From positions 1,647,160 to 1,711,159 of the forward strand of contig JAWQFM010000013.1 of the NCBI GenBank assembly GCA_033442325.1: 64,000 nt of DNA. The letters are read 5' to 3'. Source of the stretch: Salpingoeca rosetta. Lineage: Eukaryota; Protista; Choanoflagellata. A program made the translations under genes and the position numbers. Each line of letters opens with the position of its first letter. Position 1 is the first letter of the stretch. The notes below the pieces were generated by a model that saw only the letters and a list, made by a program, of their open reading frames with translations, was not told where the DNA came from and made no database searches. Positions 51,492 to 57,791 of this stretch are shown here, piece after piece.

Positions 51492-54400
51492 CTACAGCTG
51501 TGCCTTCAAGACCTCCTCGTCCACCTTGACAAACACTTTGGCGATGGGCAGCACCTGGGCTTCTTGCGAGACGACGTACTCTTCAAAGTCAAACTTGCCA
51601 GGCACGGTCGTGGATTGGAAGGCCATGCGGCGCGACACCTGGATGTAGTGTGAGTCGCACCCGTTCTTCAGCTTTCGCCCCAGAAAGTCACACGTGTCCA
51701 TGTCAGGGCCTTCTGAAGGGTAGTCAGTGTCCCGGGTGATGGGGTACGTCAGCCCAGTGCTGACGGCACACAACAACAGCACGTGCTCGCCGCAGTCGTT
51801 TGGGGGTCGCCAATTGCCAGTGGCCAAGCGTGTCGAGTAGCCAGCTGCGTAATTTGCTTGCGGCGTGAGGTAGATGCCGGCACCAAAGTAACCCGGGTCA
51901 TCCGCGCTGCTTAGGTTGGCGGTGCCACTCGCTGTGATGCTGTCAGCAACAGCTTCGTCGCACCCGTGCCAGGCAACGAGAACATTGACATGGCTCATGC
52001 CGGAAGGTGTCTGGGCAAACTGGGACTTGAGCCGAACGAGCATCTGCCGCTTGCCAGGAAAGGCGGCGCCAAAGTCTTTGTTGAACGGGTTGCAGGCCGT
52101 GCTGATGCTGCGGCGGTTGGCGGACCGCTTCAGCTGCGCGTGGAACGCCTCCAGCATTGCCGTTGACTTTGACACCTCCACCCTCGACAGGGTGAGTCCC
52201 GACGCCATCTCGCTCTCAATCCACCGATAGAGCTCGGTGTCCCCTGGAAGCGGCGCGGAGTACACGCCAAAGGCGTTTGGCGCATTCCAAGGCAGCTGCT
52301 CGTCGAATGTGTCGTCCAGGCGCCACGCAGAGTGGTGCCACTCGTGATCACGCAGCTGCCACGAAGGCATGACGGGGGCAGGCTGCGTTTGTCCTTTCAG
52401 CAGCAGGTCGCACACGCGCTCGGACACCGGGTGTGGTGACGCCGTGGGCACCGTGGGCACCGTGGACGCTGTGGACGTGACAAATTGGTCTGCGCCTTTG
52501 CCCTTCAGATCTTCCATGCGGTATCCTGTGGGATGCTCTTGGTGCGCCTTGAGGTGTTTGGTGCTGAGCACGAGGTGGGCGTGGTCAATGCCCTGCGCCT
52601 CCTCTTGCAGCAGGCAGAACACCTGCAATCAATAAACGTCGCGTGGGGCGGGGAGGGGGAATTACGAGTACGTTGTGGGGCAAAAGGAAGGGGAGGAATG
52701 TTGGTGTTGCACACATGTACACAGCCTCATGAACACGTGCAGGTAGAAAGACAGGCAGGGGAGCAGACAGAAACTTACACACAGAGACACAGATAGACAG
52801 GCACACGCACGTACACACACACACACACACACACACACACACACACACACACACACACACACACACACACACACGCACACACGCGCGCGCACGCACACAA
52901 ACACACACACACACACACACACACACACACACACACACACACACACACACACACACACACACACACACACACGCATACACGTACTGACCTCCATCAAGCA
53001 AGGCAGCGCGCTGCACTCCGCACCGGGAGGTGCTCGAACCCACACATCAACGGCACGGTCGCTGCGCAGCAGTCCAAGGCACTGCACGCCGTCCCGTTCA
53101 CAGAAGAAAGCGTCCTTCCACACCCGCAGCGTGGCACCAAACGCCCGCAGCAGCAGCGTCTGCACATGCGGGAAGAAGCCCGGCGGAAGCGCAAATGCGG
53201 CGCTCTCCACCACCAATCGCCGCCCGCCATACAGCGGCCACATCCCGGCGCGCGGCCAAGCGTCCTCAAGGTCAACCACGTCATCCACTCGACTGGGCAA
53301 CATGAACCGCCGCTGGCCGTCATCGTCAGGCGGGAGCTCGAAGCAGAGGAGCGTGTGCTGAAGCACGTCGACAACGACGTCGGCGCTGGCGATGCCGCAG
53401 AACGCAGTCTCGAGATCGGTGAATGTTACAACGCCGTTCTCTGAAACGGAGCCTTGCTGCACGCCATCGGGGGCAAGCGCCCTCCCCAGAACATCATGCA
53501 GAAGCCAATTTGGGGACACGAAGACATGGTCGACCAAAGCCGGAGACGTGGAGTACCAAAGCAGGTCGCCGCGTGAGTGCAGATACCTGCAACGAAGGAA
53601 GGAAGGAAGGAAGGAAGGAAGGAAGGAAGCAAGGGAAGGAAGGAAGGAAGGAAGGAAGGAAGGAAGGAAAACAGAGCATCAGTTGTGAGAGATGGTGTCG
53701 TGCACGTGCACGAACTGGGGGGGGGTTGTCACAAAACAGCGACACACACACACACACACACACACACACACACACACACACACACACACACAGACACACA
53801 CACACACAGACACAGACACACATACACACAAAAGCATCGGACAATCACGCGCACAACAGCCCACCTCAGCGTGAGTCTGAACATGTCACCCTCGTTCGCC
53901 GAAATGAGGGCCATCTCACTGTCCCGGGCACATGTGTACCGGAACAGCTCGTCAGTATCCCACATGGGCTGGTGCGCAGCTGCATCCGACAGCGCCTTCG
54001 ACACTTCGGACACCACTTTTGGCACCAGCACCTCGCGGTTTCTGAGCCACCGCCAGTGCTCAATCAGATGAGAGCGGAGAGCATCAAAGTTTCGCCCACG
54101 GCCCAGGTGGCAGTTCACGGAGATGAGGCTGTCGTGGATGTCAATGATATCGCCAAAGGTGTGCTTGAAGGATGCAATCATTGCTGCGCCCCACGGCGGC
54201 TGTCCGTTGGCATTCACAGCCCCCTTCTTGAATGCCACATCTCTCTTCGTTCCCACAACCACGACGCGCGGCTTCACCTCGCCCATCGCATCGTCGTCCA
54301 CTGTTGCTTCTGCGGCCGCCACCCCCTGCTTGAGTCGGGTGCAGATGAACCGCAGCCAGTACCTGGCGCGCTCCTTCACGTGCTCCTCGGGCTGGGACAA

Positions 54401-57400: not shown

Positions 57401-57791
57401 CACAGATCCAACCTACATCGTGTGTGCGTGTGCGTGCGGGTGTGGGTGGGTGTGTTCGCGCGCGTGTGTGTGTGTTGGGTCGGGGGAAGGACGTGAGGAG
57501 AGGGGCCAGTAAATGGCACGTGGAGAAGGCAGCGCACCCTGTGAATCACGCCAAGCAAGCATTGCAGTGCAGCTGTGCAGCATGGCTCATGACTGTGAGA
57601 AGTGACTGAATGACTGTCTGCAGTCGCTGCACACAGGAACAGGAGATGGGAGTAGAGGGAGCTCACATGGCGGTTGCGTCGCTCTGCTTGTCTGCGACTG
57701 TGCGAATGATGGTCTTCACCTCTTCTTCCAACTCGCCCTCCTCCATCAACGCCTCAAGCCTTGCTTGCCATCCCTCGTCTTCTTCCATCAT
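51492..57791 (-). CDS. Roco protein: RI-type LRRs - Roc GTPase - COR - PARP-like ADP-ribosyltransferase. Exons 57791-57667, 57412-57329, 57133-57050, 56735-56652, 56463-56380, 56138-56055, 55856-55773, 55488-55405, 55297-55205, 54818-53865, 53586-52989, 52622-51492.
   Basis: LRRs such as LQRNSIGDAGVTALAPALEHLAALKTLE. Roc motifs G1 AKVFVCGDYGIGKTTM, G2 RTPGI, G3 VYDFGGQLAYHVIH, G4 VVVGTKRD. COR motifs YLHSRGDLLWY, VFVSPNWL, RFMLPS, LPPGFFPHVQ. ART motifs VAWHGC, GYFGAGIYLTPQANYAAGYS, LLLCAV, DSH, EEYVV..EAQVLP. Confidence 0.88.
53594..53668. repeat. Intronic (GAAG)n repeat; a (CTTC)n polypyrimidine tract on the coding strand
   Basis: Immediately upstream of the acceptor at 53587-53589. Confidence 0.9.
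54848..55011. repeat. Intronic (AG)n microsatellite; (CT)n on the coding strand
   Basis: About 80 units. Confidence 0.95.

What the first reader, a model, noticed from the sequence alone, without database searches (positions are those of the whole stretch)
51492..57791. Roco GTPase fused to a PARP-like ADP-ribosyltransferase instead of a kinase
Seen: the LRR, Roc, COR and ART exons join in frame through GT-AG junctions. The C-terminal ~250 aa has WHG (51964-51972), GYFGAGIYLT (~51864-51893), YAAGYS, LLLCAV and EEYVV..EAQVLP (~51552-51584), the ordered PARP/ART signature with an H-Y-E triad. Established: characterised Roco proteins (LRRK1/2, DAPK1, MFHAS1, Dictyostelium GbpC/Pats1) carry kinase, death or no effector domains. 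Inference: a ligand- and GTP/dimerisation-gated ADP-ribosyltransferase. I do not know of a characterised example.
Basis: partly seen in the sequence, partly recalled or inferred. Interest (0 to 1): 0.85.

Follow-up and report, generated by a model that had tools for sequence, protein, structure and literature searches.

The report
Choanoflagellate Roco GTPase ending in PARP-like enzyme
This is a real, expressed gene of the choanoflagellate Salpingoeca rosetta whose protein joins a leucine-rich-repeat sensor and an LRRK2-type GTPase switch to a PARP-like ADP-ribosyltransferase. [quoted passage not shown]

Summary
On the minus strand, 12 GT-AG exons (57791..51492) encode a 1162-aa protein. It is identical to the public Salpingoeca rosetta protein PTSG_05784 (XP_004993654.1, UniProt F2UB79), which is uncharacterised. 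Spliced RNA contigs from two studies join the Roc, COR and ART exons at exactly 52989|52622.

The domains are seven ribonuclease-inhibitor/NLR-type LRRs (one 84-nt phase-2 exon each), a Roc GTPase with intact G1, G3 and G4 motifs, COR-A/B, a low-complexity linker and a PARP catalytic domain. That domain folds confidently (pLDDT 96). It superposes best on tankyrase and PARP1 and keeps the H1005-Y1037-E1134 triad.

The genome holds at least 13 paralogs. Twelve show Roc-COR-ART where the upstream DNA could be read, and most lie near contig ends. The genome has at least 53 COR-A loci in all. The next gene upstream is a Roc-COR-TIR protein.

I found no paper describing a Roco-PARP fusion. A published catalogue of about 2,900 bacterial LRR-Roc-COR proteins lists TIR and caspase outputs but no ART.

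My best reading is a cytosolic, NLR-like sensor whose GTP switch controls an NAD+-using effector. The architecture is shown. The gating, the enzyme activity and the immune role are inferred. I rate it a new variant of a known kind.

The parts
57667..57791 (-). Exon 1: start codon and an acidic helical N-terminus (aa 1-42). No signal peptide is evident.
   Evidence: The ATG is at 57791 and a GT donor follows 57667. Identical to XP_004993654.1.
55405..57412 (-). Exons 2-8: seven LRR exons of 84 nt (28 aa) each, all with phase-2 introns. Coordinates are 57412-57329, 57133-57050, 56735-56652, 56463-56380, 56138-56055, 55856-55773 and 55488-55405. The repeats are of the ribonuclease-inhibitor/NLR type. 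The introns are rich in CA/GT microsatellites.
   Evidence: GT-AG and phase. Pfam LRR_6 E 4.4e-23. A family profile hits ribonuclease inhibitor and NLRP LRRs in the PDB at E 1e-53 to 1e-26. The intron repeats are only microsatellites.
55205..55297 (-). Exon 9 (93 nt): LRR C-terminal cap and linker to Roc.
   Evidence: GT-AG and phase. The loose end of the RNA contigs at 54818 continues with the sequence that begins at 55205.
53865..54818 (-). Exon 10: Roc GTPase (P-loop GDYGIGKT aa 311-318, switch II DFGGQ 381-385, G4 TKRD 459-462) and the start of COR-A.
   Evidence: Pfam Roc 27.4 bits. Motifs. The Roc-COR profile hits LRRK2 residues 1311-1614 at E 1.2e-7. Covered by the spliced RNA contigs.
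52989..53586 (-). Exon 11: the rest of COR-A, and COR-B.
   Evidence: Pfam COR-A E 2.4e-6 at aa 584-684, matched by all 10 family members, and COR-B in 2 of them. RNA contigs join it on both sides.
52371..52622 (-). First 84 aa of exon 12: low-complexity Ser/Thr/Pro-rich linker (aa 787-870).
   Evidence: Translation. Least conserved segment among the paralogs, 50% identity. Low pLDDT in the full-length model.
51492..52370 (-). PARP-like ADP-ribosyltransferase domain (aa 871-1162) plus the stop codon. The triad is H1005 (WHG), Y1037 (GAGIY) and E1134 (FEEYVV).
   Evidence: Pfam PF00644 40.5 bits, above the cut-off. AF2 pLDDT 96.2, pTM 0.93. Foldseek best hits are tankyrase and PARP1 ART at E 9e-12, target-normalised TM-score (TMt) 0.71-0.77 for tankyrase chains. 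In the profile alignment to tankyrase-1, H, Y and E line up. E1134 is invariant in 45 homologs.

Best explanation
Shown: window 51492-57791 (minus strand) is Salpingoeca rosetta gene PTSG_05784. It is expressed at a low level as a single spliced mRNA. It encodes a 1162-aa cytosolic protein: N-terminal helices, seven RI/NLR-type LRRs, a Roc GTPase with intact nucleotide-binding motifs, COR-A/B, a flexible linker, and a PARP-fold ADP-ribosyltransferase with an H-Y-E triad. It is one of at least 13 paralogs of the ART exon. All 12 whose upstream DNA could be read keep Roc-COR-ART.

Inferred: the protein works like an NLR or a bacterial LRR-AP-GTPase-COR conflict protein. The LRR solenoid, whose predicted concave face is the most variable part between paralogs, binds a ligand. 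That ligand is most likely a microbial, viral or danger-associated molecule. Binding changes the nucleotide state and oligomeric state of the Roc-COR switch. The switch then releases or brings together the C-terminal ART domains. These use NAD+ to ADP-ribosylate a host or invader target, or themselves. The triad does not tell whether the product is mono- or poly-ADP-ribose.
For: Gene and transcript: the 12-exon GT-AG model is identical to XP_004993654.1. RNA contigs from two studies join Roc|COR|ART. Raw stranded RNA reads lie only in the orientation expected for a minus-strand RNA.

Domains: Pfam gives LRR_6, Roc, COR-A and PARP. The Roc-COR profile hits only LRRK2 and an archaeal Roco in the PDB, at E 1.2e-7. 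The G1, G3 and G4 motifs are intact. The ART model has pLDDT 96 and matches tankyrase and PARP1. H, Y and E align to the tankyrase triad, and the Glu is invariant in 45 homologs.

Family and context: there are at least 13 paralogs of the ART exon, and Roc-COR precedes it in all 12 where upstream DNA was available. Eleven of the 14 copies lie within 65 kb of a contig end, whereas such zones make up about 16% of the genome. The genome has at least 53 COR-A loci. The adjacent upstream gene is Roc-COR-TIR, a second Roco with another NAD+-using output. Between paralogs the LRRs are the least conserved domain (50% against 66-70% for Roc and ART). Predicted concave-face positions are the most variable (0.21 against 0.36 pairwise identity, p = 7e-5).

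Literature: bacterial LRR-AP-GTPase-COR proteins with variable C-terminal effectors are predicted conflict systems (PMC8195603). Choanoflagellates were reported to lack NLRs (PMC6040629).
Against: There is no functional data of any kind: no ligand, no GTP binding, no ADP-ribosylation and no response to infection. Expression is low (depth 1-4 in about 1.6 Gb per run). Contig-end enrichment could partly reflect assemblies breaking at repeated gene families, since no telomere repeats were seen at two contig ends. Variable LRR faces are expected in any diverging LRR family, and I chose the position classes myself. COR-A scores below Pfam's cut-off in this protein (28 against 35.3 bits). The full-length AF2 model was poor (pLDDT 56), so nothing can be said about how Roc-COR contacts the ART domain. 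H-Y-E is necessary but not sufficient for activity. Dictyostelium and human Roco proteins act in ordinary signalling rather than immunity.
Confidence: 0.55

Rival explanations
1. It is an ordinary signalling Roco, like LRRK2 or the Dictyostelium Roco proteins. The GTPase-controlled ART modifies endogenous substrates in trafficking, cytoskeleton or life-stage transitions, in the way LRRK2 phosphorylates Rabs. It has no role in defence.
For: Every characterised eukaryotic Roco protein acts in cell signalling (established knowledge; reviewed in PMC4104024, listed). S. rosetta has complex life-stage transitions. Relatives of this ART module are fused to actin, PH, kinase and ARM domains in other protists, which would suit regulatory roles.
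Against: Several features are typical of receptor repertoires under conflict rather than of single-copy signalling enzymes. There are at least 13 diverged paralogs, mostly near contig ends. The total Roco repertoire is at least 53 loci. The gene is clustered with a Roco-TIR gene. The LRR face is the most variable part.
Confidence: 0.3
2. The PARP-like domain is a pseudo-enzyme, or only a binding module for NAD+ or ADP-ribose, like ZAP/PARP13. The protein then signals by scaffolding or oligomerisation.
For: The domain is very diverged from solved PARPs. Single-sequence phmmer finds no PARP in the PDB at E < 0.85. The Tyr-to-Tyr spacing after GIY is shorter than in PARP1 and tankyrase (read from the sequence). 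ZAP's inactive PARP domain is among the profile hits.
Against: H, Y and E are all present and align with the tankyrase triad. The Glu is invariant, and the Gly-rich NAD+ loop is nearly invariant across 45 homologs. ZAP-type pseudo-PARPs have lost the triad (established knowledge).
Confidence: 0.12
3. It is a gene-model artefact: two neighbouring genes, a Roco and a small PARP, wrongly fused.
For: The last exon has a long open frame of its own. A 226-aa fragment call of it (P0001) exists in the protein collection.
Against: Spliced RNA contigs in two studies run through both junctions with GT-AG introns and a preserved frame. The same Roc-COR-ART order is kept in 12 paralogs.
Confidence: 0.02

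Closest known systems
Roco family: human LRRK1/2, DAPK1 and MFHAS1; Dictyostelium Roco proteins; Chlorobium and Methanosarcina Roco
   Same: An LRR followed by a Roc GTPase and a COR tandem. The family profile of Roc-COR matches LRRK2 residues 1311-1614 (E 1.2e-7) and an archaeal Roco (4wnr), and nothing else meaningful in the PDB. The G1, G3 and G4 motifs are canonical.
   Different: The output domain is a PARP-fold ART rather than a kinase, a death domain or nothing. The LRRs are of the 28-residue RI/NLR type, with one repeat per exon. Switch II keeps Gln (DFGGQ) where LRRK2 has Arg. The gene belongs to a lineage-specific family of at least 13 copies.
Bacterial LRR-AP-GTPase-COR-effector proteins, predicted counter-invader conflict systems (Kaur, Iyer, Burroughs, Aravind 2021, eLife, PMC8195603)
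   Same: The same three-part logic: a variable LRR sensor, a Roc-COR switch and a swappable C-terminal effector. The gene next door in this window has the commonest bacterial arrangement, COR+TIR.
   Different: This one is eukaryotic and full of introns. The effector is an ART or PARP domain. That combination does not occur in the paper's source tables (COR+TIR 581 rows, COR+caspase 36, COR+ART or COR+PARP 0).
Tankyrase and PARP1 catalytic (ART) domains, the H-Y-E clade of the diphtheria-toxin-like ARTs
   Same: The fold (Foldseek E 9e-12, target-normalised TM-score (TMt) 0.71-0.77 for tankyrase chains), the H-Y-E triad and the Gly-rich NAD+ loop.
   Different: Sequence identity is only 13-16%. 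There are no ankyrin, SAM, WGR, PARP_reg, macro or WWE domains, so it is not an orthologue of any named human PARP. It belongs to a protist and metagenomic ART clade of about 700 proteins at E < 0.001. That clade is fused to many different N-terminal modules.
Animal NLRs, plant TIR-NLRs and SARM1
   Same: RI-type LRRs like those of the NLRPs, a nucleotide switch, an NAD+-using effector on the same polypeptide, and a multigene clustered organisation.
   Different: The switch is a Ras-like GTPase plus COR, not a STAND ATPase. No NACHT or NB-ARC domain is present. The effector is an ART, not a TIR, CARD or PYD domain.
Brown-algal LRR-ROCO candidate immune receptors (Teng et al. 2024, PMC11378527)
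   Same: A eukaryotic Roco family with one LRR per symmetric-phase exon, proposed to act as immune receptors.
   Different: That paper mentions no PARP or ADP-ribosylation. Here I saw no near-identical LRR exon or intron cassettes.

Membership tests
Roco proteins | A Roc (Ras of complex) GTPase domain with nucleotide-binding motifs | tested here: met
   Pfam PF08477 scores 27.4 bits against a cut-off of 27 on the exon, but 24.4 bits in the full-length scan. Nine of 10 family members match it. The motifs GDYGIGKT, DFGGQ and TKRD are present. A profile hit to the LRRK2 Roc domain supports it.
Roco proteins | A COR domain directly C-terminal to Roc | tested here: met
   COR-A has E 2.4e-6 but 28 bits, below the 35.3 cut-off in this protein. 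All 10 family members match it, and the S. infusionum relative scores 45.7 bits. COR-B is found in 2 paralogs. The profile alignment to LRRK2 runs through Roc and COR-A.
Roco proteins | GTP binding and hydrolysis, and COR-mediated dimerisation | not testable with these tools
   The full-length AF2 model was too poor (pLDDT 56). No biochemistry is available.
PARP / ARTD (H-Y-E ADP-ribosyltransferases) | The PARP catalytic fold | tested here: met
   PF00644 scores 40.5 bits against a cut-off of 26.7. AF2 pLDDT is 96.2. Foldseek matches to tankyrase and PARP1 ART have probability 1.0 and E 9e-12.
PARP / ARTD (H-Y-E ADP-ribosyltransferases) | The His-Tyr-Glu NAD+-binding and catalytic triad | tested here: met
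   H1005, Y1037 and E1134 align with the tankyrase-1 HG, GIY and E-Y motifs. The Glu is invariant, and G-x-F-G-x-G-x-Y is nearly invariant in 45 homologs.
PARP / ARTD (H-Y-E ADP-ribosyltransferases) | ADP-ribosyltransferase activity, mono or poly | not testable with these tools
   Needs an enzyme assay.
Named PARP subfamilies (PARP1-3, tankyrase, macro-PARPs, CCCH-PARPs, PARP16) | The accessory domains that define each subfamily (WGR/PARP_reg, ANK+SAM, macro, WWE/zinc finger, ARTD15_N) | tested here: not met
   None is found by Pfam. The best PDB profile hit is only E 6e-5.
NLR / STAND receptors | A NACHT or NB-ARC STAND NTPase | tested here: not met
   There is no such Pfam hit. Only the LRR part resembles NLRP LRRs. 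The protein may work like an NLR but is not a member of the family.
LRR-AP-GTPase-COR-effector conflict systems (PMC8195603) | An N-terminal variable LRR, an AP-GTPase with COR, a variable C-terminal effector, and several copies per genome with different effectors | tested here: met
   The architecture is present. There are at least 13 PARP-type copies and at least 53 COR-A loci. A TIR-type copy lies next door. The family was defined in prokaryotes, and ART is not among its listed effectors.

The most novel reading that the evidence does not exclude
Choanoflagellates were reported to lack NLRs. They may instead use a greatly expanded Roco repertoire (at least 53 loci in S. rosetta) as cytosolic innate immune receptors. 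In that system, interchangeable NAD+-consuming outputs (a PARP-like ART in at least 13 genes, a TIR in others) are fired by an LRR-sensed ligand through a Roc-COR GTP switch. This would be a third, GTPase-based solution to the NLR problem, in the sister group of animals. It would be directly comparable to the bacterial LRR-AP-GTPase-COR-TIR systems. It could also bear on what LRRK2's ancestral job was.
Probability: 0.35. Interest if true: 0.8.

Novelty: new variant of a known kind. Interest (0 to 1): 0.6.

Why it matters
Roco proteins are studied intensively because of LRRK2, yet how Roc-COR controls an output domain is still debated. A natural Roco with a different, easily assayed enzymatic output would be a useful comparative system, because NAD+ use can be read out directly.

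If the family is a receptor repertoire, it fills a gap. Choanoflagellates have TLR-like, cGAS-STING and SARM1-like genes, but no NLRs were detected (PMC6040629). It would also link the predicted bacterial LRR-AP-GTPase-COR-effector conflict systems to a eukaryotic counterpart that keeps the same modular logic with TIR and ART outputs.

S. rosetta is genetically tractable (my own knowledge), so the hypothesis can be tested.

Tried and rejected
Only 51480-54845 was laid, so the LRR exon junctions have no direct read support.

2. The full-length AF2 model built on a 10-sequence alignment was poor (pLDDT 56, pTM 0.35). It gave no information on the domain arrangement, so I ran no fold search on it.

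3. Single-sequence phmmer of the ART domain and of Roc-COR against the PDB gave nothing significant. Profiles were needed.

4. A search for duplicated LRR exon or intron cassettes within the gene found only microsatellites. There is no evidence here of recent cassette shuffling.

5. No other copy of the gene lies in the window.

6. Telomere repeats were sought at two contig ends and not found. I therefore write 'near contig ends' rather than 'subtelomeric'.

7. The S. infusionum relative P0018 has COR-A and PARP, but I could not recognise a P-loop or DxxG motif in its Roc region. A complete Roc-COR-PARP outside S. rosetta is therefore not shown.

8. Literature searches by accession, and for Roco or Roc-COR together with PARP or ART, found no description of this fusion. 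The library lacks most subscription journals, and InterPro could not be queried.

9. I did not use complex prediction, because no specific binding claim is made.

10. I rejected the two-gene artefact reading (see the rival explanations).
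Full report
WHAT IS THERE

The window is eukaryotic: about 57% G+C, with introns full of CA/GT microsatellites. On the minus strand between 57791 and 51492 I built a 12-exon model. I used open frames, GT-AG sites and intron phase.

- Exon 1: 57791-57667.
- Exons 2-8, seven LRR exons of 84 nt: 57412-57329, 57133-57050, 56735-56652, 56463-56380, 56138-56055, 55856-55773 and 55488-55405.
- Exon 9, 93 nt: 55297-55205.
- Exon 10: 54818-53865.
- Exon 11: 53586-52989.
- Exon 12: 52622-51492.

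Ten of the eleven introns are phase 2. The intron before the last exon is phase 0. The product is 1162 aa.

An exact look-up shows this is Salpingoeca rosetta PTSG_05784 (EGD74092.1, XP_004993654.1, UniProt F2UB79). NCBI calls it 'hypothetical protein' and UniProt auto-names it 'Poly [ADP-ribose] polymerase'. My model is letter-for-letter identical to it.

TRANSCRIPT EVIDENCE

Logan contigs of runs from two different studies (X4 and X5) lie on the stretch as three collinear pieces: 54818-53863, 53583-52987 and 52620-51480. After shifting the ambiguous GT bases, the junctions are 53865|53586 and 52989|52622. Both introns are GT-AG.

The X4 contig is 3695 nt long and has 896 nt upstream of 54818. 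The predicted upstream CDS is 806 nt, which leaves about 90 nt of 5' UTR.

Raw stranded RNA-seq reads (X16 and X17) cover the exons at depth 1-4. Their first mates lie only on the + strand, as expected for a minus-strand RNA in most stranded libraries. Expression is low.

DOMAINS

LRR. Pfam finds LRR_6 (E 4e-23). The repeats are of the 28-residue ribonuclease-inhibitor/NLR type. A family profile hits ribonuclease inhibitor, NLRP14, NLRP3, NLRP5 and NOD2-like LRRs in the PDB.

Roc. Pfam Roc scores 27.4 bits on its exon, against a cut-off of 27. The domain has a canonical P-loop GDYGIGKT (311-318), switch II DFGGQ (381-385) and G4 TKRD (459-462).

COR. Pfam COR-A gives E 2.4e-6 and 28 bits, which is below the cut-off. 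However, a profile of the Roc-COR region of nine paralogs (A3) finds LRRK2 residues 1311-1614, covering Roc plus COR-A, at E 1.2e-7. It also finds the Methanosarcina Roco 4wnr, and no other family. All ten family members match COR-A, and two match COR-B.

ART. Pfam PARP PF00644 scores 40.5 bits on the last exon, against a cut-off of 26.7. With a 45-sequence alignment (A1), AlphaFold2 gives pLDDT 96.2 and pTM 0.93 for aa 871-1162. Foldseek places the model on tankyrase-1/2 and PARP1 ART domains. The best E is 9e-12, the probability is 1.0, and the target-normalised TM-score (TMt) is 0.71-0.77 for tankyrase chains. The profile-to-PDB alignment puts WHG on tankyrase's FHG, GAGIY on GAGIY and FEEYVV on YAEYVI. 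The triad is therefore H1005-Y1037-E1134. The Glu is invariant and the G-x-F-G-x-G-x-Y loop is nearly invariant across 45 homologs.

No accessory domain of any named PARP subfamily is present. Sequence identity to solved PARPs is 13-16%.

FAMILY AND CONTEXT

A six-frame search of the 55.4-Mb genome finds 13 further full-length or near-full-length copies of the last exon, at 52-69% identity. I fetched up to 8 kb upstream of each. Every copy with available upstream DNA shows Roc and COR exons in the same order (12 loci).

Eight annotated S. rosetta proteins carry LRR_6, Roc, COR-A and PARP annotations.

Eleven of the 14 copies, this one included, lie within 65 kb of a contig end. This gene is about 28-34 kb from the end of the 1.73-Mb contig C13. 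Such zones make up about 16% of the genome. No telomere repeats were seen at two of the ends. Assembly breaks at repeated families may therefore contribute.

The genome has at least 53 COR-A loci. That is a very large Roco repertoire.

The next gene upstream on the same strand (58.4-64 kb) has COR-A (69.8 bits), COR-B and a C-terminal TIR_2 domain. Two Roco genes with different NAD+-using outputs therefore sit side by side.

Between paralogs, the LRRs and the linker are least conserved (50%), and Roc and ART are most conserved (70% and 66%). Within the LRRs, the predicted concave-face x positions are the most variable. Mean pairwise identity is 0.21 there, 0.36 at convex x positions and 0.65 at scaffold positions (Mann-Whitney p = 7e-5). 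This fits a diversifying ligand-binding surface. It is not a codon-level test.

DISTRIBUTION

An exhaustive HMMER search with the last exon against 1.84 billion representative proteins gives 696 hits at E < 0.001. The ART module is promiscuous. In protist and metagenomic proteins it follows ARM repeats (including LRRK2-type ARM), PH, a protein kinase, an ANF receptor, actin, WD40, NHL-EGF, F5/8C, SPRY-SAM and DUF4116. In one protein it follows a GBP-type GTPase.

Among the long proteins I scanned from the 150 listed hits, Roc and/or COR occur only in S. rosetta proteins and in one Salpingoeca infusionum transcript. That transcript is P0018, which has COR-A at 45.7 bits plus PARP. Its Roc region lacks recognisable P-loop and DxxG motifs.

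LITERATURE

No paper in the searchable library cites the accessions. None describes a Roco or Roc-COR protein with a PARP or ART output.

- The PARP survey of Perina et al. 2014 (PMC4245714) discusses S. rosetta PARPs but not this one.
- Kaur et al. 2021 (PMC8195603) describe bacterial LRR-AP-GTPase-COR proteins with at least 24 alternative C-terminal effectors as predicted counter-invader systems. Their source tables contain COR+TIR 581 times and COR+caspase 36 times, but never COR+ART or COR+PARP.
- Richter et al. 2018 (PMC6040629) did not detect NLRs in choanoflagellates.
- Teng et al. 2024 (PMC11378527) propose brown-algal one-LRR-per-exon ROCOs as immune receptors and do not mention PARP.

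INTERPRETATION

Shown:
- The gene is real and expressed.
- The protein combines LRR, Roc, COR and a PARP-like domain.
- The GTPase motifs are intact and the ART triad is conserved.
- The family is lineage-specific, multicopy and clustered.

Inferred, with overall confidence of about 0.55:
- The protein is a cytosolic sensor whose LRRs bind a ligand.
- Its Roc-COR switch then licenses the ART domain to use NAD+ on a target. This is analogous to NLRs, TIR-NLRs and bacterial AP-GTPase conflict proteins.

The main rival (0.3) is an ordinary signalling Roco with an ART output. A pseudo-enzyme reading (0.12) is disfavoured by the conserved triad. The fusion-artefact reading is rejected by the RNA junctions and by 12 paralogs with the same domain order.

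VERDICT

The structural interpretation is supported and the gating mechanism is untested. The protein is already in public databases but is uncharacterised. The architecture appears undescribed in the literature and confined to choanoflagellates, as far as these searches reach. I rate it a new variant of a known kind: a Roco, or LRR-GTPase-COR-effector, protein with an ART output. Interest is 0.6.

Noticed in passing
window 58389-64000 (minus strand): The adjacent upstream gene is another Roco with a different NAD+-using output. It has COR-A (69.8 bits) and COR-B in ORF 59283-61256, and a TIR_2 domain (27.6 bits against a cut-off of 28) in ORF 58625-59698. Its Roc-COR is too diverged from PTSG_05784 to be found by tblastn.
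   Followed up: partly
whole genome G000: There are at least 53 COR-A loci in the 55-Mb S. rosetta genome, many of them also close to contig ends. Humans have 4 Roco genes and Dictyostelium has 11 (my own knowledge). The outputs of most of these loci were not examined.
   Followed up: partly
window 43868-46480 (plus strand): A single 871-aa open frame is packed with TPR repeats (TPR_12 E 4e-133; NPHP3 and MalT-like TPR). Other first-stage notes call the flanking ORFs TIR/HET-like, but Pfam found nothing in 44567-46750(-), 46698-47996(-), 48836-50149(-) or 50119-51201(-).
   Followed up: partly
proteins P0004, P0007, P0165 (ENA and NCBI metagenome contigs): The closest non-Roco relatives of the ART domain (47-55% identity) follow armadillo repeats that match Pfam's LRRK2-type ARM model (PF23744). 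They have no Roc or COR. Their source organism is unknown.
   Followed up: no
protein P0166 (Logan assembly, 888 aa): A guanylate-binding-protein-type GTPase (PF02263) is fused to the same kind of PARP-like domain (28% identity, E 3e-12). This is a second, unrelated immune-type GTPase joined to this ART clade.
   Followed up: no
protein P0001 (226 aa, NCBI, 1322-nt contig) = window about 52622-51946: This is a fragment call of the last exon. It is identical up to WHG and then runs into another frame (…WHGVRRSCC). It looks like a one-base difference or a sequencing error in a short contig, not a separate gene.
   Followed up: no
G000:C26:175362-176678: A more distant ART-domain locus (30-36% identity to the last exon) has no detectable Roc-COR within the 8 kb upstream.
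   Followed up: partly
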